Of a stretch of 64,000 nucleotides of DNA, positions 9,922-38,994 are shown in pieces. Within the stretch, counting starts at the first letter, position 1. The number at the start of each line of letters is the position of its first letter. The stretch comes from Paraphysomonas bandaiensis. Taxonomy: Eukaryota; Protista; Chrysophyceae. Under the pieces are notes generated by a model, which was not told the DNA's origin, did no database searches, and saw only the letters and a program-made list of their open reading frames with translations. The stretch covers positions 124,001-188,000 of the forward strand of contig CBFFRP010000210.1 of assembly GCA_965644295.1 (NCBI GenBank), in the 5' to 3' direction. Made by a program: the position numbers and the translations under genes.

Positions 9922-10143
9922 CATACATACATACATACATACATACATACATACATACATACATACATACATACATACATACATACATACATACATACAT
10001 ACATACATACATACATACATACATACATACATACATACATACATACATACATACATACATACATACATACATACATACATACATACATACATACATACAT
10101 ACATACATACATACATACATACATACATACATACATACATACA

Positions 10144-10173
<30 letters not shown>
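9922..10173. repeat. (CATA)n microsatellite, ~63 units
   Basis: Directly visible perfect tetranucleotide tract. Confidence 0.98.
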
Positions 10174-13799: not shown

Positions 13800-13897
13800 T
13801 GTATGTATGTGTGTGTATGTATGTATGTATGTATGTATGTATGTATGTACCCAGACACACACACACTCTCTCTCTATGTATGTATGTATGTATGTAT
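13800..13897. repeat. Compound (TGTA)n/(CA)n/(CT)n microsatellite upstream of gene
   Basis: Directly visible. Confidence 0.9.
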
Positions 13898-13990
13898 GGA
13901 GTGCACAGGACTGCACTGGCTATCAGCATTATCCATATATATAACTTGCATTCCTAACAACTACAAACTTACATTCTATACAATTTACAA

Positions 13991-19976: not shown

Positions 19977-21534
19977 TCATGGAGGATTCTGTGAACGAAA
20001 CCACTGCAGAACATTCACATGTTTATAATATGCAGCAGCAGATTCGCAAGAACCTTTCTTCCATGGACATGGGGGGTTCTGTGAACGAAGCCACTGTAGA
20101 GTATTCAATTGTCCAGACTCTGCAGCTGCCCTGCAAGTCCACTCATTCCAGGGACATGGAGGGTTCTGTGAACGAAGCCACTGTAGAGCATCCAATTGTC
20201 CAGACTCTGCAGCTGCACTGCAAGACTTTTCATCCCATGGGCATGGAGGGTCCTGTGAACGAAGCCACTGCAGAACATTCAAGTGCCCCTTCCTAGCAGC
20301 AGCTGCGCAAGTATATTCATTCCAGGAATCTGGAGGGTTCTGTGAACGAAGCCACTGCAGAATATTCAAGTGCCCTCCATCTGCAGCAGCAGTACAAGTG
20401 CTTCCAAACATTGAATCTGGAGCGTTCTGTGAACGAAGCCACTGTAGAACATTCAAGTGCCCACCACTAGCAGCAGCATCACAAGTAAACGCATTCCAGG
20501 GGCATGGAGGGTCCTGTGAACGAAGCCACTGCAGTACATCCAAGTGTCCTCCCTCTGCAGCTACATAGCAAGTCCACGTATCCCAGGGACATGGAGGGTG
20601 CTGTGAACGAAGCCACTGCAATACATTCAAGTGTCCACCTCTAGCAGCAGCTTCACAAGTTGCTTTATCCCAGGGACATGGAGGGACCTGTGAACGAAGC
20701 CACTGCAATACATTCAAGTGTCCACCTCTAGCAGCAGCTTCACAAGTTGCTTTATCCCAGACATGGAGGGACCTGTGAACGAAGCCACTGCAATACATTC
20801 AAGTGTCCACCTCTAGCAGCAGCTTCACAAGTTGCTTTATTCCAGGGACATGGAGGGTGCTGTGAACGAAGCCACTGCAATACATTCAAGTGTCCACCTC
20901 TAGCAGCAGCTTCACAAGTTGCTTTATCCCAGGGACATGGAGGGTGCTGTGAACGAAGCCACTGCAGCACATCCAAGTGTCCACCTCTAGCAGCAGCTTC
21001 ACAAGTTGCTTTATCCCAGGGACATGGAGGGTGCTGTGAACGAAGCCACTGCAACACATCCAAGTGTCCACCTCTAGCAGCAGCTTCACAAGTTGCTTTA
21101 TCCCAGGGACATGGAGGGTGCTGTGAACGAAGCCACTGCAATACATCCAAGTGTCCACCTCTAGCAGCAGCTTCACAAGTTGCTTTATCCCATAAGTATG
21201 TGGGGTCGTGTGTGTGTATATGTGTATGTATATGTCTCATGAGGTGCATCATCTGCTGTAGTCTGCCGTATAGTGCACATGTATTCATTAGTTGGGTGTG
21301 TGGGCAGCCCACAGACAGAGCCCATGAGACCATTGAGTTGGTCATACAGTAGTGAGATGCATGTGACTCAAGTCTCTCTCTGCTCTTATCTCTCGTGTTG
21401 TCTCTCGTGTTATCAGCCATATCGTGAAGTCCCTTACAAGTCATGACCACAGGAAGGAGAGCTGAGTGTGGGATCATAGAGATGATGAGACGAATCACAT
21501 CATCATTGAGAACAGATAGAGTGATTTCATTCAT
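19977..21534 (-). pseudogene. F-box-like + 26-aa ankyrin-repeat protein (PCPWDxxTCxxAAxGGHLxVLQWLRS), frameshifted
   Basis: ~15-16 repeats of 78 bp. A 2-bp deletion near 20760 splits the ORF and a second lesion lies at ~19977. N-terminal LSVLNDDVIRLIISMI is F-box-like. Intronless. Confidence 0.85.
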
Positions 21535-21739: not shown

Positions 21740-21866
21740 TATGTATGTAGGTAGGTAGGTATGTAGGTATGTATGTATGTATGTATGTATGTATGTATGT
21801 ATGTAGGTAGGTAGGTAGGTAGGTAGGTAGGTAGGTAGGTAGGTATGTTGTCATATATGTATGTGT
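21740..21866. repeat. (GTAT)n/(GTAG)n microsatellite in a divergent intergenic region
   Basis: Directly visible between the ankyrin gene (-) and the Rost-like gene (+). Confidence 0.92.
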
Positions 21867-23742: not shown

Positions 23743-25371
23743 CTAGTTACGACGAACTCTCTTTACCTTGGGTACCTCTGCGATATTTTGTGCAGTAGTC
23801 TTAAATTTTTCCCCAAGATTTCGCTCCCTCTGTTCAATGAATATTGGATCACTCAAAGCCTTGGTATATATATCAGCCATCTGTTGTCGACTGCTCACAT
23901 GAATTAATTTCGCTGTATTAAACTGTTCGGGATCCACATGCTCTCTAATCATATGATACTTAATCTCAATATGTTTCGATCGTTGATGTTGCACTGGATT
24001 TTCCGATATATCCTGAGCACTTTGACTATCCAGGAATAATGGTGTGGGCTCGTCAATTTTCAATCCTACTTCACCAGTCACCCCCCGAGACCATATCATT
24101 TCCTGTAATCCATTATATAAGCATTGATACTCTGCTTGCATAGTCGATGTAGCTACAGTAGACTGAAGTTTGGAACCCCACGATAGTGGTCCACCAGCTC
24201 CAAACATAACATAACCTGAAGTTGATCTCCTCGTCAACGGGTCACCCGCCCAGTCAGCATCCGTGAACATATGAAGATCAAAATCTTTCCCTCTATATTG
24301 AATGCCTTTTTCCGTAGTACCTCGTACATACTGCATTAAATGTATCATTAGTTTACATACAGTGATATTCACTTTCGTTGAGAATCGTGACAATACTCCC
24401 ACTGCATATGATATATCCGGCCTTGTATTCATAGATAAATAGAGTAACGCTCCTATTAGTGGACGATAGGGAAAATAGTCAACTAATTCCTGCTCTTCAG
24501 TCGAATGCACATGTTCCACTCCCACTTTGATCCTATCCATGACATCACTAGGTAGTGGGTATCGCCGAGTCTTGTCCCTTGGACCCAGAAAATCCACATA
24601 CTTCGCCAATATCTTTTTGATGTACACTGTCTGGTCAAGTTTGAGACAATTCTGAGTTCTCGTCACTCTCACGTTCAAAAACTGGCCAATCTCATTCATA
24701 TCTGTAATATCGAACCTTTCACATACTCGTCGCATAATTTCCAAAATAATACTCGTATCTCGACATGCTATCAGCATATCATCTACATATATTACTAACA
24801 GAACTAATTCACCCCTGATCCGTGTAAAATATAAACATGGGTCAAGTATACATGATATAAAATGCAAGGACTTAATAAACTTGTTAAGACATTTATACCA
24901 TGACCGTGGTGAGCTTCGAAGACCATATAAACTTTTCTTCAGTTTAAAGCAGTGTCCTGGTGGCAATTTAAAATCTGGTGTAGCATACATATACACATCT
25001 CCTTGTATATCTGCATACAAAAATGCATTAGATACGTCGAGTTGATGCACCACCATATTCATAACAAAAGCGATTGCTAAAAGCAATCTCACTGTTACCG
25101 CTTTTACCACTGGAGCATAATTGTTGGCTCTGCCACCTTCATGGTCTCCGCATCCAAGTACCACAAGTCTTGCCTTATATCGTTGAATCGCACCCTCTTT
25201 GTTGCGTTTCAAGGCGAAAACATACTTAGATTTCAATGGAGTGACACCGGTAGGGATGGGCTTAACTTCCATGACTCCCCTACGTTCTAAACCGTCACGT
25301 TCAGCTTGTCTTGCTGAACTCCATTGCTTCCGTTCCGGCAACTCCAAGGATTCGGAATATGTCTGAGGCAC
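23743..25371 (-). mobile_element. Ty1/Copia RT-RNase H ORF (protease and integrase absent)
   Basis: RYKARLV, QLDVSNAFLY, LKKSLYGLR, YVDD, DADWAGD, RSKHIEIKYH and ADIYTK motifs. Confidence 0.96.
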
Positions 25372-27631: not shown

Positions 27632-30600
27632 TTAATCTTCTTCATCAGAAGAATAAACCACATTTCGAGGTAGTAAATTTCTTACATTTTCATCAGGATG
27701 TTGAGTTAGAAAATTTTGTAGAGCATACGTTTTTCTAACGTTAGCCCATGGTTCCCATGTAGGTTTTTCATACCCTATCCAATGTACTAGAAATTTTATT
27801 TGACTTTTCGGACCTTTAGCTCGACCTTTTATTTTTGAAATATGGTCAATAGCATAAAAGTTTCCACCATCTTTACATGCCACTTGTAAGGGGTCAATAG
27901 TAGAGGGATCGTAATTAAATTCCCTTAATTTCTTTATATGATAGTCTTTATTACGTTTAGTAACAATATCTTGAAGAGTATATTTATCTCCAATAACATT
28001 GACTACTCGCATTGGACCTTTAAGATATGGTAATAACTTACTTGCCGGTCCAGGACGTAAAGCATTTTGTCTATGCTCAACTAACACATAAGAATTTATT
28101 GGAAATTCTTTTGTTTGTATATTTGGTGCAGTTGCCATGTGGATTTCATCATGTTTGCGAAGATTTCGTCTTGCAATATCCATAATAGTGGACTGAACCT
28201 TTTGTATTCTATCTATCCAATGTGATAGCTTTTGTTCGTTTTCGTCCAAGTTCTCATTGTGTTCAATGAATAAACTTTTATCTAAATCTACTGCATTCCC
28301 AAATAGAATACTAGCGGGAGTAACGCCGGTGCTTCTATGTTTAGAAGAATTCATAATTCTTTGTACTAAAGGTAGATACATTGACCAATTATTTAGTACA
28401 TTCTTATCAAATATAATATTCCTTAAGTGCCTTAAAATTTCTTTATTAGCACGTTCAACTATAGCATTTTCTTCTTTAGAATACGCCATCGAAAATGATT
28501 GATTACTTCCAACCATTTCTATCAATGATTTTGTTAAATCATCCACAAATGCTGGTCCAAGATCCGAATGAATCTCAATAGGTGCTCCATATCTACCCAG
28601 GTGTTGAAGCAATCCCTTTGCCGCCGCCATGGCAGTGAGATTCTTAGTAGGGATTAATTCTACCCACCTAGAAAAAGAATCGATAATCACTAATATATTA
28701 GTGTATCCATCCTCATCTGGATGCAGACTCTGAATAAAATCCACTGCTATCCGTTGCATCGGGCCATATGTTGAGACAGTAAAGGGATGAGCATTAATTA
28801 TAGGTTTAATTCTACTCATCTTTTGACAACAAGGACAAGTTTTAATAAATTTTGTCACATGTGCCCCTTGCTTTGACCATTTATGACCATTGTCTTGTAA
28901 TTTTTGTATTGTACGATCAATACCATGATGACCTGTAACGTTGTTATGAAATCTTTTAATAATTTCCCATTCCTTGTTTGGAACTTTAATATCGGGAATT
29001 AGGGAAGCACATTTTGTTTGCATTTTAGATTCTAATGCACATAGTCTACTAAATGCATCAGCAACAACATTATCAGATCCTTTGATATCACATAGATCAT
29101 AATCATATGCTTGGAAACATTTCAACCATCGCTGAACTTTCTTATCCTTAGCGTAATCAGTTCTCAACTGAGTAATATTTTTATGATCTGTTTTGATCGT
29201 AAAGTATCTATACCTTAATATAGCGTAATCAGTTCTCAACTGAGTAATATTTTTATGATCTGTTTTGATCGTAAAGTATCTATACCTTAATAGGTAGTCC
29301 CATTTATCTAAGGCATAGTATATAGCATATCCTTCTTTCTGAGGTGTATCCCAATTCATCATTCTTTCATCGAATGTTTTACTGAGAAATCCTATTGGAC
29401 GTTCTACACCATCTACTACTTGGTAGAGGTATGCTCCTATTCCATAATCAGATGCATCGGTCAATAAATATATTGGTGACTCGTCATCAATGAAAAATAA
29501 TGTTGGACATTCATGGATCATCAATTTGATCTTTTCAAATGCTTCATTGGCATCCTCTGTCCATTGTAGACGTTTACGTCTATGATAGTTGAGAAGCATT
29601 TTATTTAACGGTCTCACCACTAAGGAGTGGTTGTGCACGTGATCCCGAAAATAATTTGCCAATCCAAGGAAAGATTTTAGACCCTTCATAGTTTCAGGCT
29701 TTGGGAAATTTAATACACTATCCAGACGTTCTCTAGTAAAGTGTAACCCTTCCTCATTTAGAGTATGTCCTACATATTGTACTTCGGACTCTCCTATTTT
29801 CACTTTCTCAGGATTAATGTAAACATTGTATTTCCTGAAGCGTTCTAGAACTTTAACGTAATTTTCAATTAGTTCATCTTCTGTAGAAGCATATATAATC
29901 AGGTCATCTAGATATAATTCACATATGAACATAATCAACCCGGCAAGCACAATTGTTGTTAATACTCGTTGAAAGTATGATGGAGCACCACTCAAACCCA
30001 TGGGTAGTCGGAGCCATTCGAATACTCCCCAGAAGGTTATAAATGCCGTCCACTTTCTCGAGTACTCTGAAATTTTAGCCTGGTAATAACCAGATACTAA
30101 ATCCAGAATTATGAAGTATTTGGGTTTCTTAGACCCAATACGTTCTAACATTTCTTTGATGTTAGGTATCGGCCAACGTTCCCTCTGTGTGTGCTTGTTT
30201 AGACCTTTATAGTCTACACAGAATCGCCATTTATCATTTGGTTTGGGAACTAATAATACCTGGCTATAATAAGGAGCCGTACTTGGTTGTATTATTCCAT
30301 GCTCCACAAATGTATCGATTTGCTTTTTACAAGCATACTGTCGTACTCGATCCATCTTTCGTGGCGGACCACAATGTTTTGGTTGTTCCCAGGCATCCCT
30401 ATCTACCTCTAATTCAAAAGGTGGAACATCCATTGGCATATCCGACACTGTGGTTTTAAATCTATCCTTATAGATTTCATGGATTTCTCTCACCCTCCTT
30501 TGTAAAGATTCGGGACCAGAGATTTTAGTTGGTAACGTAGCACCTTCTACTTTTTCCTGAGTATTTGTAACTATTTCTTCTGGAATTGACTCCAGATAGT

Positions 30601-31105
30601 TATCTCTAATCTCGCCTATATCTTCCTTTTCATATGCACTTATACGCATGGATGATATTGGGGGTGAATACATAGTACTAACCAAACTATTACTTGTAAG
30701 TAAATTATTATTATAACTAAGGTGTTCCTTAGCTTGGCGCCTTAATGTTTCCATGTTGTTATAACATGTGGCTCTCTCACTAATATGTTCCGAGAGAAGC
30801 TGAGTCTTCTCAGCATGGCCCGCGGCCGTAGCTAGCATTTTCCCTGCTAACTCTCTTTCCATAAAGTGAGATGGAAAATGATCAACTAATCTATATTTCT
30901 TGATAGTTTCTCTACCAATTATGATATCAAAGGTGCTATCTATTATCAAACATTGCAACTCAATATCAAGAGTATTGTTATACTCATCAGTTAATCTTAT
31001 AGTTATTATCATATATTGCTTGCTACTACAACAAGCATTATCAAGCGCACTACAAATTTTAATGTTACACTCGTGCAATGAAATATTATACCTAGCAACT
31101 AACAT
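27632..31105 (-). CDS. Gypsy pol: RT, RNase H, integrase, chromodomain
   Basis: WRFCVDY, YLDD, TDASDYGIGA, HHCC zinc finger, DDE core, GPM and FLVHWIGYEKPTWEP motifs. Confidence 0.95.
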   Translation of the reverse strand: MLVARYNISLHECNIKICSALDNACCSSKQYMIITIRLTDEYNNTLDIELQCLIIDSTFDIIIGRETIKKYRLVDHFPSHFMERELAGKMLATAAGHAEKTQLLSEHISERATCYNNMETLRRQAKEHLSYNNNLLTSNSLVSTMYSPPISSMRISAYEKEDIGEIRDNYLESIPEEIVTNTQEKVEGATLPTKISGPESLQRRVREIHEIYKDRFKTTVSDMPMDVPPFELEVDRDAWEQPKHCGPPRKMDRVRQYACKKQIDTFVEHGIIQPSTAPYYSQVLLVPKPNDKWRFCVDYKGLNKHTQRERWPIPNIKEMLERIGSKKPKYFIILDLVSGYYQAKISEYSRKWTAFITFWGVFEWLRLPMGLSGAPSYFQRVLTTIVLAGLIMFICELYLDDLIIYASTEDELIENYVKVLERFRKYNVYINPEKVKIGESEVQYVGHTLNEEGLHFTRERLDSVLNFPKPETMKGLKSFLGLANYFRDHVHNHSLVVRPLNKMLLNYHRRKRLQWTEDANEAFEKIKLMIHECPTLFFIDDESPIYLLTDASDYGIGAYLYQVVDGVERPIGFLSKTFDERMMNWDTPQKEGYAIYYALDKWDYLLRYRYFTIKTDHKNITQLRTDYAILRYRYFTIKTDHKNITQLRTDYAKDKKVQRWLKCFQAYDYDLCDIKGSDNVVADAFSRLCALESKMQTKCASLIPDIKVPNKEWEIIKRFHNNVTGHHGIDRTIQKLQDNGHKWSKQGAHVTKFIKTCPCCQKMSRIKPIINAHPFTVSTYGPMQRIAVDFIQSLHPDEDGYTNILVIIDSFSRWVELIPTKNLTAMAAAKGLLQHLGRYGAPIEIHSDLGPAFVDDLTKSLIEMVGSNQSFSMAYSKEENAIVERANKEILRHLRNIIFDKNVLNNWSMYLPLVQRIMNSSKHRSTGVTPASILFGNAVDLDKSLFIEHNENLDENEQKLSHWIDRIQKVQSTIMDIARRNLRKHDEIHMATAPNIQTKEFPINSYVLVEHRQNALRPGPASKLLPYLKGPMRVVNVIGDKYTLQDIVTKRNKDYHIKKLREFNYDPSTIDPLQVACKDGGNFYAIDHISKIKGRAKGPKSQIKFLVHWIGYEKPTWEPWANVRKTYALQNFLTQHPDENVRNLLPRNVVYSSDEED

Positions 31106-32540: not shown

Positions 32541-33756
32541 AATATTGTTATATCACAGAGATTGAGTACTACTTATTAAGTAATATTACTGTGGGCTTGC
32601 ATACATATGTGTATGTGTGCAAAGCAATACCCAAGTACAGAAGTACAAAATAATGATTATTATCGTATAATGAATCATGAATAATACTGTCTACAATATC
32701 AACGGCTATTGCTAAATCCCAACAACAATCACCTTCCCTACAGTTTGTATTCCTAACTACATGGTACACGTATACAATACAGTACTGTACTACTAATCAT
32801 ATAATACAGGACAAGTACACGTATATATTCTATATGTAAGTGGATGGTCCTACACTGATCACCATCCTCCTCAGCATTGCCATTTGACTGAGCAGTAGAA
32901 GTATCTTCCTCCTTCAACAGTTCTCTTACAGACTCATCCCGCCAAGGAGTGCGATAGTGCTCCGCTAAATTATGCAGAGTAGAGTATCTCCTAGTATCAC
33001 GTTTCTTTACCGGTTTCGGCAACGTGTCAGGAACTGTAGGTGTTCCTTTCGTAACTGTTTCATCTGCCCCTGGGATATTTTGATCTTCCCTTAAAATCGT
33101 GGGGCTCTGCGCTCTAGAGCCGACAGGTGTACCTCTACGTGAGGCCCGCTCTTCGAGTCGCGTGACTCTGAATGTTAAGTCATCTATTCTCGTATCGAAT
33201 TTCCTTTCCAAGGCATCGAAACGTGAGAGAATGATCTCGAGCATTGAAGGCTCTAAATCATCCTTAACACTGCCTTCAGAACCAGAGTGGCTCTTAGGGC
33301 TACTCCTACCAACGGGAGTTTGCATCTTCCACCTTTTAGCTGCTGTTACACTCTTTAGTTTATATTCCCTCACAGTGTTTATATACTGCGTCTTATGACG
33401 CAGCCTCGTTTGACAACTCAACTGACACCTCACAGTTTGGTTTGATAACCAAGACTATGGCTCGTGATAACGCTAACTACTATCACTGTATAGGAATCAA
33501 GAAAATGAGACCAAAGAAGTGATATTATTACAGGTAAACTTTTGTTTTAATCAACTATACTCGAGTGACTGACTCCCGCGAAGAATCAGCACGCAAACAC
33601 CACCGCTAGTGATGTCAGGTCGCTAGTACCCAAGTAAGGTTAACATAAACAATAACTGAGTCACAACAGAAACATAAAGTATGAAGACAACCGTAGAGCT
33701 GCACACACACAACGTCATCCATGTCACACTGTGTTGCAACACACAACCACAACGCA

Positions 33757-36700
33757 CGTAGAGAAATAAGAGGATGCTCTTTTCAGTTTAGCACTTGAAG
33801 TGACTGTATAAGATATGCATAGAGCACATAGAGGTGCATGGTGTTATGTTATGCAGTGTTTTGTGTACGGCTGTAGACTAGAAGTATAATTTTCTCTTAC
33901 TAACGAGTTCTGTAGTAACTGCGAAGAGAACCTTGCTTTTGACTACCTGTAGTGTAGACTGTGTGAAAAGGCAACGGGGGTATTCCGTCCGTTTATTGAT
34001 CTGTAGCATCCGTGACTTCCGACCGAGTACCGTGTTTTTTCTCTGCGTAAGAGAAAATTATGAAGAAAATGACAAAAGAGAGATATCCCAGATATCCAAG
34101 ATCTGGAAGAAGACAAGAGTCTGACAGTTATGACGCAGTGCCAATGCTAAGATATGGCGCAAAATGTAATCTGCCTATTTTCAAGCAGAAATTGGTGGCC
34201 GAAGCCATGGTGAGGTACGGAGACCTTGCACGACGCTATAAAACTATTAGACGAATATCAAGAGTTCAACGCAACGAAAGATCCACTATCGCTATGGCTT
34301 GCAATAAAAAAGACACACAAGGTGGCGACAAGCTCCAATGTGGGAGCAGTAATGAAAGCGGAGACAAGGCGCAAAATACCAAGAAGTTCGGCAAGGAACT
34401 TTCGAAAGCATCGTGACATACAAGGAGAAATTTGATTATTTACTGGATGCATACAAAGAAATGGACAACGCCAAAAAGTCCGACACCGATGTGGCGATGG
34501 ACTTCTTTAACGGACTAGACGACCACAAAGAATCCAAAAGGGGGCAGAAGAATCCACGGCACAGAGAACAACGGAGGAAACCCCTGATATGTTGGGGGTG
34601 CGGCGAGCCAGGGCACCGACTCAATGAATGCCCTGACAACCAAGACGCAGATGAGAGAAACTGTGCGGTGACCCTAAAGAACGCATTCACATCCGGAGGC
34701 CACCCATTCAGGTGGTACGAGGTACTGCTAGATAATCAGGCGGACGTATCAGTGGTTCACCCTGCATTACTGCACAATATAAGGCCGGCGACCAGGAAAT
34801 GTACCGTGGCAGGACTCTCAGGGCACGCTATGGAGTTACCAAATGTAGGAGATCTGGATCAATTCTTTCCCTGCACAACGGCTGATCATTTACGTGCGAG
34901 TGTGCTATGTCAATCAGATGTGGAGGATATGTACGATGTAACATATGTGCAAGGCAAATCGTATACTGTGCATTTACCTGGTAGAGACCTGGTATTCGCA
35001 AGAAGGAACAAAATGTACGTGGCTGATATGCGAGACTGGGCCACTGGAAACGTACATGTCACAACAGTAGCTGACATGGAAGCGAGGCACTCGAAGGCCG
35101 AAGTGGCTCGAGCACGAGAGGCATGGGACCTAGTCAAGACCTCGGGATTTGACTCTGAGAAAGACGCAATCAACTTAGTCAGTGATGGCAACATAACAGG
35201 ACTGAAACTCACCGCAAGTGACGTACGGAGAGCATTCGAGATATATGGAATCCCATACGAGTCAGTGCGCGGGAAGCACACTCACAAAAAAACGGGGCGC
35301 CAGTACGTAGACACCGCACTGAAATCGGAGATGCAGCGAGAGCAGAGGCTCTACTCAGACATTTTCAGCGTGCGACAGCAGTCCTTTCTTCTCACGATGG
35401 CGGAGCCACTGGGAGTGTCAGTAGTCTCTGCAATACAGAATGAGACAACAGAAGCATTAGGACTCGCACTTCAGGAACACGTTAATCTGCTACGGAGCTA
35501 CGGGTATGTGCCGACCATCGCTTACCTCGACCCACAACCTGGCTTCAAACCACTCCGAGGGCAGATTACAGGGGTGGAGATAGGCGTCGCGGGAGCAGGC
35601 GATCACCTCGACAAAATTGACTCAAAAATACGACGCCTGAAAGAGATGATCAGGAGCATCCATGCAGGACTACCGTGGGATTTACCTGACGCCAATGTGA
35701 AAGATCTGGTACGGTATGCAAACAGCAGGATGAATCTAAGAAGGCCATCCACCAATGGATCAACGGTAGCGCCGCGAGTGGCATTGACAGGGATCAAACG
35801 GAATTTCAAGAAGGAGCTGGCTCTCGCATTCGGTGACTACGTGGAGTGCTACGACCCGAAGGTCAAGAGCAACGACGCAGAGCAGGACCGGACAGAGCCG
35901 TGCATAGCCTTGTATCCTGCAGGCAATGCAAACGGCAGCTGGATTTTCCTGAATCTGAAGACAAACAGATATGTCAGCAGAACAAATTGGAGGAAGATGA
36001 TAACCACGCAGTTGGTGATAGACGCAGTGAACAAGACCGCACAACTAAATCGAAAAAATGCAAGGCACTCACCAGCTATCGCGGACCAACCGGACCAGTG
36101 CGGAGAAGCGCAAGACGACACCACAGAGGGTGGGAATGCAACTGCGACAACAGAGCATGAGAGCAATACCACAGAGATGAGCGAAGACGCACCTGCTACA
36201 AACAATTCGGAATCTGTGGGACAAATGGGCGAGGAAGAGAGCCCGACGACTACCGGCAGTGACGCCCCTAATGAAATAAATACAGAAGACATAACAGGGG
36301 TGGTACACAACACAATGAGCTCACCGTCACTAACAGAAGGAAGGAGAGCAGCTGGTGCTATACGGAAACCAGTGATGTACCGTGCCTATCACACAAGCAT
36401 TACACATGGGTTGAAGGAACACGGTAAGGAGGCATACCTAGCTATAGTGCGGGAGCTGAAACAGTTGCTGCACGACAAGAAGGCCATAGCCCCAGTGCAT
36501 CGGAGTGAGCTGTCAACGACCCAGATCAAAAGGGCGATTCGGTCATTGATGTTTCGAAAAAATCAAGGCCAGACTGGTTGCAAATGGCGCGCAGCAGGAC
36601 AGAAAGCTGTACACCGATACATCGTCGCCTACAGTAGCGATGCAATCAGTATTTGCATGTCTAGCAATAGCAGCGAAAGAGAGACGACATATTTCAACAG

Positions 36701-38248
36701 TGGACATTGGAGGAGCTTACCTGAATGCCGAGATGACCGGAGAAGAAGTCATTATGGAGCTCGAACCGATGCTGGCCGCTATCCTGAAAAAGATGGACCC
36801 AGCCGTACAGCCATACATAGACGAGCGCGGAAGACTGCTAGTACGATTGGACCGGGCCCTATACGGATGTGTTCAGAGCGCGAAATTGTGGTACGATACA
36901 CTGAGGAATTACCTGGAGAGCATCGGCTTTGCAGTCAACCCCGTAGACCAATGCATTTTCAATCGGACCGTCAACGGAAAACAATGCACAGTGACCCTGT
37001 ACGTAGACGACCTATTAGTGATGTCACAGTGCAAGGAAGACACAGAATGGCTAGTGGCAAAACTGAAACAGCAATACGGCGAGGTGAAACACTGTACCGA
37101 CCATGACATGTCGTATATAGGTATGCACATACATGTACAGGACGGGAAGGCAGTGGTATCGATGAGGGCATACCTGGAGGGAGTGCTCGAGGAGACGGGG
37201 ACCACAGGAGGGACGGCTTCCCCGGCAACAGCATCTCTTTTCACCGAGAAGTCCGAGCAGAAATTGGGCAAGAGAGACGCCGCAGAATTCCACACAGTGG
37301 TGGCAAAGCTGCTATACCTGGCAACAAGGGTGAGGCCGGATATTTTGTTGTCTATTGCGTACCTGGCTACTAGGGTGAAGGACCCGACGCAAAATGACAA
37401 GCAGAAGCTGGGGAGAGTGATGAAGTACCTGGCGGTCACCAAGAACCAAGATTTACACCTGCGGATAGGAGATAAGATTCAGGTAAAAGCGTACATTGAC
37501 GCATCATTTGCGACACATCAGGATGGAAAGGGCCATACCGGAGTGGTGGTCAGCGTGGGGGATGCGGCGGTGCTTTGTCGGTCGACAAAGCAGAAACTGG
37601 TCACCAAGGACTCCACTGAGTCGGAATTGGTCGCACTCTCTGACATGCTGCCGTGTGTGATGAAATTGCATGAGTTCCTGTGTGGTCAGGGGTGTATAAT
37701 GGACTCACCTACAATATTCCAGGACAATGCATCTACTCTCAGCCTCGTAACGAAAGGAGGAGGCAAATACCGATCGAAGTATCTACGAGTAAGGCAGGCT
37801 TTAGTCGAAGAACACCATTATAGGGGAGACGTGAAGCTTCAGTACTTACCTACAGGAGAGATGTTGGCTGATGTGCTGACTAAACCCCTACAAGGAAAAT
37901 TGTTTCGTCATTTGATGTGTCGTATCGTCGGAGAAGCATAGACACATCACAGGGGTGCGTAGAGAAATAAGAGGATGTTCTTTTCAGTTTAGTACTTGAA
38001 GTGACTGTATAAGATATGCATAGGGCACATAGAGGTGTATGGTGTTATGTTATGCAGTGTGTATTGTACGGCTGTAGACTAGAAGCATAATTTTCTCTTA
38101 CTAACGAGTTCTGTAGTAACTGCGAAGAGAACCTTGCTTTTGACTACCTGTAGTGTAGACTGTGTGAAAAGGCAACGGGGGTATTCCGTCCGTTTATTGA
38201 TCTGTAGCATCCGTGACTTCCGACCGAGTACCGTGTTTTTTCTCTGCG
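33757..38248 (+). mobile_element. Copia-type (CoDi-like) LTR retrotransposon with CG...CG termini, frameshifted
   Basis: 291-bp LTRs at 33757-34047 and 37958-38248. 5-bp TSD ACGCA. PPT CACAGGGGTG. Domain order: knuckle CWGCGEPGHRLNEC, protease LLDNQA, integrase, RT (DIGGAYL, LYGCVQSA, YVDD), RNase H (DASF, ADVLTKP). Confidence 0.95.
34047..34062 (+). promoter_or_regulatory. Putative self-priming PBS GTAAGAGAAAATTATG overlapping the first ATG
   Basis: Reverse complement of LTR nt 33886-33900 (15/15) and of 3' LTR nt 38086-38101 (16/16). Confidence 0.7.
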
Positions 38249-38994
38249 ACGCAGGCTGTGTCATACAAGCAGTATAACAATATACAGTCATGTCAACGAC
38301 TCTTATCAAATACGGACTTGGAGAATACTAGCTAACGTACACTTTCATATGTAAGACAACACACTCCAGATATTTAAACATGCAACAGAGGAGCCATATA
38401 AGCTCCTGATAAGTAGGAACTTCTCGTTACTTTGCTTTCAGCGTGCAAGTCCAGTACCTTAGGTGCAAGGAGCTTCACTAACGAGTGACAAACGGTGTAC
38501 TGTGGACCCTGTTGTGCATTGTGCTGCATTGAGCACATATTAGCCTTATGAAGGCCATCAAGTGGTACACGTATACCCACAAATGGAGGTAATAGTCTCT
38601 GGATGCACTTTCTACCCGTGACCAGTGTATGCAGGGTCTATGCAATTCTTCCGATGCGGGTGTGAGGGTCTGCAAGGCCTGTCTCTGACATACTGGTCGC
38701 TGAGGCTGGGTTGCCATGCTAGGAGTCCTATTCAATGCTGAAGAGCTGCAGTCTGAGTACTGGTTCAGGTATGAGAGAGGCTTGAGGCTTTAGTCATCGT
38801 GGAACGAGTTCATTACTTCTGTGTTTTGCTATATGAATAATAATAATATGAGTGATTATTTGTTGTCTACTGATGAATGCGTTATTAATAGTTAGTCGCG
38901 CTCTGCGCTTCCAAGCACAACATTGTAGTCTTGAAGTATCACTTGTAGTAACGCACTATAGCCACGTAAGAAGGGCACGCGAGATGCCACGTGG

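What the first reader, a model, noticed from the sequence alone, without database searches (positions are those of the whole stretch)
33752..38253. LTR termini are CG...CG rather than TG...CA, with an atypical integrase
Seen: both LTRs begin CGTAGAGAAA and end TTTCTCTGCG (imperfect inverted repeat). The boundaries are fixed by a perfect 5-bp TSD (ACGCA), so the element integrated with a 3'-CG end. The integrase region has no HHCC finger and reads HLDKIDSKIRRLKE, where related elements typically have H...IER.IR..KE, so the triad may be D-D-D. The protease motif is DNQA. Known: the terminal CA is nearly invariant for DDE integrases. Inference: integrase and att ends co-evolved, and TGCA-based LTR finders would miss this family.
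Basis: partly seen in the sequence, partly recalled or inferred. Interest (0 to 1): 0.75.

Follow-up and report, generated by a model that had tools for sequence, protein, structure and literature searches.

The report
Copia retrotransposon with CG-ended repeats
A young, multi-copy Copia-type jumping gene, probably of a diatom, really does end in CG...CG instead of the usual TG...CA, and its whole lineage carries an integrase whose third catalytic residue has changed from glutamate to aspartate, which makes it a natural test case for how such enzymes read DNA ends.

Summary
Window 33757-38248 is a defective Ty1/Copia element with three internal deletions. Its two 291-bp LTRs start CGTAGAG and end CTCTGCG, flush against a 5-bp duplication (ACGCA). 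All 30 LTR copies read in this genome have the same ends. At least 12 independent insertions in two families have matching 5-bp duplications. About 22 copies keep an intact gag-pol frame and identical LTR pairs.

Relatives from metagenomes (45-55% integrase identity) also have CG ends. Pfam and PDB sequence searches do not detect the integrase. Its predicted structure (pLDDT 91.7) matches retroviral integrase cores at Z about 17. Profile alignment puts Asp at the position of the catalytic Glu.

Among 214 related integrases, all 142 with Asp fall in one clade. The only two Glu-type relatives whose ends I could read appear to have TG...CA. The missing HHCC finger and the DNQA protease motif occur in both groups, so they are not tied to the CG ends.

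CG...CG termini have a precedent in Troyka, an unrelated animal superfamily with 3-bp duplications. Other first readers of this scan noted the same feature on other copies in this genome. Verdict: real, a new variant of a known kind; the coupling between integrase and ends is correlative only.

The parts
33752..33756 (+). left target-site duplication ACGCA
   Evidence: identical to 38249-38253
33757..34047 (+). 5' LTR, 291 bp, starts CGTAGAGAAA, ends TTTCTCTGCG
33888..33900 (+). LTR-internal 13-mer AATTTTCTCTTAC, complementary to the last LTR base plus the 12 bases after the LTR; candidate self-primer at the start of the transcript
   Evidence: (an A/G change at the primer site is matched by T/C here in another subfamily)
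34047..34059 (+). primer-binding site G+TAAGAGAAAATT, abutting and overlapping the last LTR base; no tRNA 3'-end complementarity
34060..34724 (+). gag remnant, broken by two internal deletions (about 192 bp near 34230 and about 221 bp near 34517 relative to an intact copy); CCHC knuckle at 34590-34631
34725..34751 (+). protease active-site motif LLDNQADVS (DNQA in place of D-T/S-G-A)
35067..35276 (+). integrase N-terminal helical domain without His/Cys zinc ligands
35331..35795 (+). integrase catalytic core (RNase H fold). Asp at 35358-35360 (strand beta-1), Asp at 35529-35531 (after strand beta-4), GAGDH loop at 35592-35606, Asp at 35619-35621 (start of helix alpha-4, the catalytic Glu position)
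35823..36005 (+). integrase C-terminal beta-strand domain (FGDYVECYDP...)
36400..37941 (+). reverse transcriptase (Pfam RVT_2; YVDD at 37000-37011) and RNase H; frame broken by a deletion of about 21 bp near 36556; stop codon at 37939-37941
37949..37957 (+). polypurine tract ACAGGGGTG directly abutting the 3' LTR
37958..38248 (+). 3' LTR
38249..38253 (+). right target-site duplication ACGCA

Best explanation
This is a defective copy of a recently active LTR retrotransposon family of about 4.9-5.0 kb. It belongs to the Ty1/Copia superfamily, in a large aquatic, diatom-associated lineage. The intact relatives encode one gag-pol polyprotein in the order gag with CCHC knuckle, protease, integrase, RT, RNase H.

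Inferred from sequence: reverse transcription is primed by the element's own RNA, because the site after the 5' LTR pairs with an LTR-internal 12-13-mer. Plus-strand synthesis starts at a polypurine tract ending GGGGTG, so the DNA copy begins CG and ends CG.

Shown: integrated copies are joined to the host at a terminal G on each 3' end, with a 5-bp staggered cut. The only departure from the canonical TG...CA is that the terminal A:T pair has become G:C; the penultimate C is kept.

Shown by structure prediction and profile alignment: the enzyme is a three-domain retroviral-type integrase with a zinc-less N-terminal domain. Its core carries Asp, Asp and, at the Glu position, Asp, plus an extra conserved Asp six residues upstream in a GAGDH loop.

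Inferred: this D-D-D site catalyses strand transfer of G-terminated ends. The Glu-to-Asp change and the A-to-G change of the ends arose on the same branch and are functionally connected.
For: Ends and duplications. There are over 40 LTR copies and two families with TSD-proven CG...CG ends. In two further families, 3' LTR matches stop exactly at ...CTCTACG.

Recent activity: about 22 copies with open frames of 1444-1488 aa, and LTR pairs with 0-1 mismatches.

Clade-wide CG ends: a polypurine tract followed by CG in L084, L085, L094, L105, L106, L142, L146 and L159. L094 reads CGTTGGAAT...ATTCAACG, and L133 has TSD CAATT.

Integrase fold: AlphaFold model pLDDT 91.7, pTM 0.88. Foldseek top hits are PFV, MVV, HIV and RSV intasome integrases at E 1e-10 over 310-357 columns. 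VIA-align gives Z 16-17, rmsd 2.2-3.0 A over 130-150 residues of RSV, HIV and FIV cores.

Triad: D105 lies on strand beta-1, D162 after strand beta-4, and D192 at the start of helix alpha-4. In hhalign (probability 100%, E 4.5e-92), D192 aligns with the invariant E of the Glu-type relatives' VERKIR motif. The basic residues at +4 and +7 are kept.

Single origin: all 142 Asp tips fall in one clade of 143, and Fitch parsimony gives 2 changes.

Glu-type relatives L122 and L128: their polypurine tract, self-primer site and terminal inverted repeat point to TG...CA.

Copia membership: Pfam RVT_2, integrase placed before RT, and gag of Glu-type relatives matching the Drosophila copia capsid at E 2e-6.
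Against: There is no biochemical evidence that D192 is catalytic or that it relates to the terminal base. The invariant D186 in the preceding loop could share or take over metal binding. The TG...CA ends of the two Glu-type relatives were inferred without target-site duplications, because those contigs are collapsed assemblies. Support for the Asp clade node is only 0.56. D186, the HHCC loss and the DNQA motif all predate the switch, so several integrase changes could matter. Neither Pfam rve nor PDB sequence profiles detect the domain, so the link to DDE integrases rests on a predicted structure and motif homology.
Confidence: 0.72

Rival explanations
1. The CG ends are real, but the Glu-to-Asp change is a passenger. 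The terminal base would be set by where RNase H cuts the polypurine primer and the self-primer. It would be read by other integrase parts, such as the GAGDH loop or the helix alpha-4 basic residues, so D192 has no role in end specificity.
For: The primer duplex includes the last LTR base in every lineage examined: G in Asp types and A in Glu types. The end is therefore also constrained by priming. D186 and many other integrase differences exist. The association rests on a single transition.
Against: The two changes map to the same branch at the resolution available. Position 192 sits on the helix that contacts the viral DNA end in retroviral integrases; this is established knowledge for HIV-1 alpha-4 residues E152, K156 and K159, not tested here.
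Confidence: 0.3
2. The third catalytic carboxylate is not D192 but D186 of the GAGDH loop (or both act). The site would then be a rearranged D-D-D, not a simple Glu-to-Asp swap.
For: D186 is invariant in all Asp-type and intermediate sequences. It arose before E192D, as shown by the 11 DDDE intermediates. The loop before alpha-4 is four residues shorter than in HIV-1 integrase.
Against: In the more canonical Glu-type relatives position 186 is variable (Q, S, E, A, K, T) while E192 is invariant. The ancestral catalytic residue is therefore at 192, and Asp is strictly kept there afterwards.
Confidence: 0.15
3. The CG ends are secondary mutations of TG...CA copies or boundary artefacts, and the family is ordinary.
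For: CpG is mutable. Old copies do show CG decayed to CA or TG (L090, L096, L133).
Against: The ends are uniform in more than 40 copies of four families, including copies with identical LTR pairs and intact frames. Duplications abut the CG directly. Decay runs from CG to TG or CA, not the reverse.
Confidence: 0.02

Closest known systems
CoDi-like Ty1/Copia elements of diatoms (Maumus et al. 2009, PMC2806351; 'Branch 1' Copia of Llorens et al. 2009, PMC2774666)
   Same: Copia domain order, RVT_2-type RT, a single large ORF, LTRs of 150-850 bp, and a diatom or marine plankton host. One relative is from Chaetoceros. That paper already noted that TG/CA is missing in 3 of 26 families (CoDi3.2, 4.2, 4.3).
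   Different: The paper gives neither the actual termini nor any integrase peculiarity. I could not obtain those sequences, so I cannot say whether they belong to this clade.
Troyka LTR retrotransposons of aquatic animals (Kojima 2025, PMC12440569)
   Same: Strictly conserved 5'-CG...CG-3' LTR termini, and an aquatic distribution.
   Different: Troyka has the Gypsy/BEL order (RT-RH-IN), 3-bp duplications, a CX2CX8-10HX4C gag finger, a CGCCA...TGGCG terminal consensus, and forms its own superfamily. The present family has integrase before RT, RVT_2, 5-bp duplications and CG(T/C/A)AGAG ends. The shared dinucleotide is therefore convergent. The paper does not state Troyka's catalytic triad.
Plant non-TGCA LTR retrotransposons (Tos17 TG..GA, AtRE1 TA..TA, TARE1 TA..CA, TGTT/AACA families; LTR_retriever preprint 10.1101/137141, PMC5659011)
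   Same: Mostly short Copia elements with short LTRs, non-canonical ends and 5-bp duplications.
   Different: None of the listed motifs is CG..CG. The survey found the first T to be the one invariable base, and that base is changed here. No catalytic-residue change was reported for them.
Tf1/sushi and plant TAR-lineage self-priming elements (PMC6317226)
   Same: The primer site is complementary to the element's own LTR/R sequence instead of a tRNA.
   Different: Tf1 is Ty3/Gypsy with TG..CA ends. TAR is a plant Copia lineage with a canonical integrase.
Retroviral integrases (HIV-1, RSV, PFV intasomes)
   Same: Three-domain architecture. The catalytic core superposes at Z 16-17. The first two Asp residues occupy the same topological positions.
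   Different: No zinc-binding HHCC, Asp instead of Glu on alpha-4, a shorter loop before alpha-4 carrying GAGDH, and 11-17% sequence identity.

Membership tests
Ty1/Copia (Pseudoviridae) LTR retrotransposons | pol order protease - integrase - RT - RNase H | tested here: met
   Integrase-fold domain at 35067-36005 lies upstream of the RVT_2 domain at 36640 onward.
Ty1/Copia (Pseudoviridae) LTR retrotransposons | RT of the Copia type (Pfam RVT_2) | tested here: met
   PF07727 at E 1.3e-19 in the window copy. It is precomputed in nearly all 102 homologs.
Ty1/Copia (Pseudoviridae) LTR retrotransposons | LTRs flanked by a 4-6 bp (usually 5 bp) target-site duplication | tested here: met
   5-bp duplications in at least 12 insertions.
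Ty1/Copia (Pseudoviridae) LTR retrotransposons | LTR termini 5'-TG...CA-3' | tested here: not met
   CG...CG in all copies. This is a usual, not defining, feature: exceptions are documented in plants.
Ty1/Copia (Pseudoviridae) LTR retrotransposons | Copia-type capsid (gag) | tested here: inconclusive
   The profile of Glu-type relatives matches the Drosophila copia VLP protein at E 2e-6. The gag of this family alone gives no PDB hit.
Retroviral-type DDE integrase (Pfam rve, DD35E) | RNase H-fold catalytic core similar to retroviral integrases | tested here: met
   Foldseek E 1e-10. VIA-align Z 16-17, rmsd 2.2-3.0 A.
Retroviral-type DDE integrase (Pfam rve, DD35E) | sequence match to the rve profile | tested here: not met
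   No rve hit at E up to 1. One faint hit among 30 Glu-type relatives.
Retroviral-type DDE integrase (Pfam rve, DD35E) | Asp, Asp, Glu catalytic triad with about 35 residues between the last two | tested here: not met
   Asp replaces Glu and the spacing is 30 residues. Glu-type relatives have D-D-E with a spacing of 32.
Retroviral-type DDE integrase (Pfam rve, DD35E) | N-terminal HHCC zinc-binding domain | tested here: not met
   No conserved His or Cys. The HHCC pattern is absent in 214 of 214 relatives. The helical domain itself is retained.
Troyka superfamily | 5'-CG...CG-3' termini | tested here: met
Troyka superfamily | 3-bp target-site duplication and RT-RH-IN order | tested here: not met
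   5-bp duplications and integrase before RT, so this is not a Troyka.
Tf1-like self-priming elements | primer site complementary to the element's own 5' RNA, with compensatory changes | tested here: met
   Covarying pairs in three families and several metagenome relatives. The transcript start was not determined.

The most novel reading that the evidence does not exclude
The Glu-to-Asp change at the third catalytic position, prepared by the extra Asp of the GAGDH loop, is what re-aims a retroviral-type integrase from 3'-CA to 3'-CG ends. This clade would then be a natural specificity switch of the integrase active site, convergent with Troyka. It would need coordinated changes at both LTR ends and in the self-primer.
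Probability: 0.3. Interest if true: 0.8.

Novelty: new variant of a known kind. Interest (0 to 1): 0.6.

Why it matters
The terminal CA is the most conserved substrate feature of retroviral and retrotransposon integration, and how the active site reads it is still studied mainly through engineered mutants. This finding offers a large, currently active natural lineage. At least 1048 representative clusters match the integrase profile at E 1e-30 or better, and Asp types predominate among the 214 classified. In this lineage the terminal base is G and the catalytic Glu is Asp, and sister lineages appear to keep Glu with CA. That gives a direct comparative and biochemical handle on end recognition.

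There is also a practical consequence. The integrase escapes Pfam rve and the ends escape TGCA-based filters, so these elements are likely to be under-annotated in diatom and plankton genomes.

Tried and rejected
Sequence-level detection of the integrase failed throughout. Pfam found no rve, phmmer against the PDB found nothing, and the profile against the PDB found nothing. Only the structure gave the link.

I looked for alternative LTR boundaries that would restore TG...CA in the window copy, and none gives a duplication. I considered an inverted repeat extended by two bases beyond the LTR as a sign of 3' processing. It is not conserved between families, so I dropped it.

I therefore could not fetch DNA for the key Glu-type and basal Asp-type proteins (P0100, P0131, P0136, P0140, P0158) or for families C and 88% beyond match coordinates.

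Several metagenome loci gave unresolved ends: L082 (left end), L096/L097 and L118. A canonical Copia in the window for an in-genome control was not recoverable, because 23743-25371 is an RT fragment only. Rfam found nothing in the region.
Full report
**Observation.** The window sequence and the repeat finder show two 291-bp direct repeats at 33757-34047 and 37958-38248, 97% identical. Each begins CGTAGAGAAA and ends TTTCTCTGCG, and ACGCA lies immediately outside on both sides. No shifted boundary yields a duplication.

Between the repeats lie a gag remnant with a CCHC knuckle, a protease motif LLDNQADVS, a long integrase-sized region, and an RT/RNase H that matches Pfam RVT_2 at E 1.3e-19. I compared the window copy with an intact relative on contig C120. 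It has three internal deletions: about 192 bp near 34230, about 221 bp near 34517, and about 21 bp near 36556. It is a dead copy of a live family.

**Genome-wide copies.** The host assembly is 62.5 Mb in 669 contigs. A DNA search with the LTR gave at least 42 matches. All 30 loci that I could read begin CGTAGAG and end CTCTGCG.

- Paired LTRs and solo LTRs carry matching 5-bp duplications: ACGCA, CGAAG, CATAC, GGTAC (solo), ACTGA (solo), GATTC, CTGTG, CGATG, ACTCG, and also CGCAT and GTATG.
- Full-length copies are 4.9-5.0 kb with a single open frame of 1444-1464 aa and 0-1 mismatches between their LTRs.
- A protein search with the integrase region found 72 places, about 22 of them within open frames of 1444-1488 aa, in families at 100, 88, 79, 72 and 70% identity.
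- The 72% family has 355-bp LTRs reading CGCAGAGCAAAG...TTTCTCT(T/A)CG, with duplications GTAGA, CATAC and ACAAC.
- For the 70% and 88% families I could only use match coordinates. 3' LTR matches stop exactly at ...CTCTACG while 5' LTR matches run on into the primer site.

The CG...CG ends are therefore a stable property of several active families and are not mutational decay.

**Beyond this genome.** The integrase region has 102 word-search homologs, none with a precomputed Pfam rve domain. One comes from Chaetoceros sp., a diatom. A profile search of 1.84 billion representatives found 9145 clusters at E 0.001 or better and 1048 at E 1e-30 or better.

A scan of JGI metagenome contigs returned 80 loci. 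Wherever the end of pol and the next LTR are present, a polypurine run ending in G is followed by CG: L084, L085, L094, L105, L106, L142, L146 and L159. Right ends, where readable, also end in CG:

- L094: ...ATTCAACG
- L082: ...TTCAACG
- L085 and L088: ...TTTCTACG
- L090: 3' LTR ...CTACG
- L133: ...TTTAGCG, with matching CAATT on both sides

The relatives share only 45-55% integrase identity with the window family.

**The integrase.** Pfam and PDB sequence searches with a single sequence or a profile find no integrase. I predicted the structure with AlphaFold from a 45-sequence alignment. The model is confident, with mean pLDDT 91.7 and pTM 0.88.

- Foldseek's best PDB matches are PFV, MVV, HIV, SIV and RSV intasome integrases at E about 1e-10 over 310-357 columns. 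That span covers N-terminal domain, core and C-terminal domain.
- VIA-align gives Z 16-17 and rmsd 2.2-3.0 A over 130-150 residues for model residues 96-250 against the catalytic cores of RSV, HIV-1, FIV and others.
- In fragment numbering (polyprotein residue minus 469), D105 lies on strand beta-1 and D162 directly after strand beta-4. A short loop G183-A-G-D186-H187 follows strand beta-5. Helix 188-207 carries D192, R196, K199 and E200.

**Placing the third carboxylate.** I classified 234 related integrase domains by these columns. 145 are D-D-D-D (positions 105, 162, 186, 192). About 60 are D-D-x-E with a variable residue at 186. Eleven are D-D-D-E.

The Glu types read ...G.G.HVP.VERKIR.IKER..., which resembles the canonical Copia P..PQ.NG..ER.NRT..E motif; that comparison rests on my own knowledge. 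A profile-profile comparison of Asp types (A2) with Glu types (A3) gives probability 100% and E 4.5e-92. It aligns D192 with the invariant E, D186 with Q, and D162 with the D of DGEGG. The basic residues at +4 and +7 from the carboxylate are kept, as in HIV-1 E152/K156/K159 (established knowledge).

D192 is thus the homolog of the catalytic Glu. On a FastTree of 214 domains, all 142 Asp tips fall in one clade of 143 tips, and Fitch parsimony gives two changes. Node support is 0.56. The order of events suggested is x186 to D first, then E192 to D.

**Link to the ends.** Only two Glu-type (D-D-D-E) relatives came with DNA.

- In L128 the self-primer site begins at an A preceded by ...ATTATTAAC, and the polypurine tract ...ATAGGAGCG is followed by TGTTATTATT. 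The inverted repeat is TGTTA(T/A)TA... only if the ends are TG...CA.
- In L122 the tract ACGGGGGTG is followed by TGCCAGTG, and the primer site begins at the A of ...CTTCGCA.

Both therefore appear canonical, but neither has a target-site duplication because the contigs are collapsed assemblies. I put about 75% on these two readings.

All Asp-type lineages I could read have CG. The association is consistent but rests on one evolutionary transition. The HHCC pattern is absent from all 214 domains of both types. DNQA is the commonest protease motif in both types, while some members keep DTGS or DSGA.

**Priming.**

- The 12 bases after the 5' LTR, plus the last LTR base, are the reverse complement of an LTR-internal 13-mer at 33888-33900.
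- In the sister subfamily an A-to-G change at the site is matched by T-to-C in the LTR.
- The 72% family uses a different pair, TGACAAGAAATTA with TAATTTCTTGTCA.
- L082, L085, L088, L094, L122, L128 and L133 each have their own pair.

This is the Tf1-type self-priming signature. It is already predicted for the plant TAR Copia lineage (PMC6317226), and other readers of this scan noted it in this genome.

The point relevant here is that the duplex includes the last LTR base, G in Asp types and A in Glu types. A change of the terminal base therefore also required a change in the primer.

**Comparison with the literature.**

- Maumus et al. 2009 reported that TG/CA is missing in 3 of 26 diatom Copia families without giving details (PMC2806351).
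- Plant surveys list seven or more non-TGCA motifs, none of them CG..CG, and found the first T invariable (10.1101/137141; PMC5659011).
- Kojima 2025 describes Troyka, a separate superfamily of aquatic animals with strictly conserved CG...CG ends, 3-bp duplications and RT-RH-IN order. He calls these ends its distinguishing feature among LTR retrotransposons (PMC12440569).

The present family is Copia by domain order, RVT_2 and 5-bp duplications. Its relatives' gag also matches the copia capsid. The shared dinucleotide is therefore convergent. I found no paper describing a Copia clade with CG ends or an Asp at the catalytic Glu position of an LTR-retrotransposon integrase. My searches were limited to the held library.

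**Limits.** I therefore could not sample the lineages nearest the switch. 

**Verdict.** The reading of a CG-ended Copia with a zinc-less D-D-D integrase is supported. The co-evolution claim is plausible but correlative. I rate it a new variant of a known kind, with interest 0.6.

Noticed in passing
flanks of L013/L014, L019, L025, L026, L029/L030, L071, L079; window 9922-10173, 13816-13898, 21768-21803: Insertions of the CG-ended families are strongly enriched in (CATA)n microsatellites. At least 7 of about 30 independent sites lie inside perfect arrays and several more lie beside degenerate ones, against about 0.5% of window positions. CATAC/GTATG recurs as the duplication. This is a possible target preference of the integrase.
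   Followed up: partly
window 33888-33900 and 34047-34059; L031-L039, L072, L082-L133: Tf1-like self-priming signature with compensatory changes between families. The predicted duplex always includes the last base of the LTR.
   Followed up: yes
window 34725-34751; alignment: The protease active-site motif is D-N-Q-A in most members of the wider family. The glycine of D-T/S-G is replaced, while a few members keep DTGS or DSGA. This is unusual for a retropepsin.
   Followed up: partly
P0092-P0094 and about 10 representatives: A sublineage has Glu instead of Asp at the second catalytic position (states DEDD and DEED), which is another active-site permutation.
   Followed up: no
protein cluster of P0001: A 208-aa MMETSP transcript fragment (P0112) sits in the same 90%-identity cluster as the protein 99% identical to this family's integrase. 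This suggests the family is transcribed in a cultured marine protist.
   Followed up: no
window 19983-21237: Tandem array of about 11 or more copies of an 87-bp unit, overlapping open frames on both strands.
   Followed up: no
window 27632-31105 (-): Ty3/Gypsy pol with RVT_1, RNase H, H2C2 zinc finger, rve and a weak chromodomain hit. It serves as a canonical-integrase control in the same window.
   Followed up: no
window 23743-25371 (-): Fragment of a second, different Copia RT with a much stronger RVT_2 match (E 8e-48) than the CG-ended family has. No integrase was recoverable next to it.
   Followed up: partly
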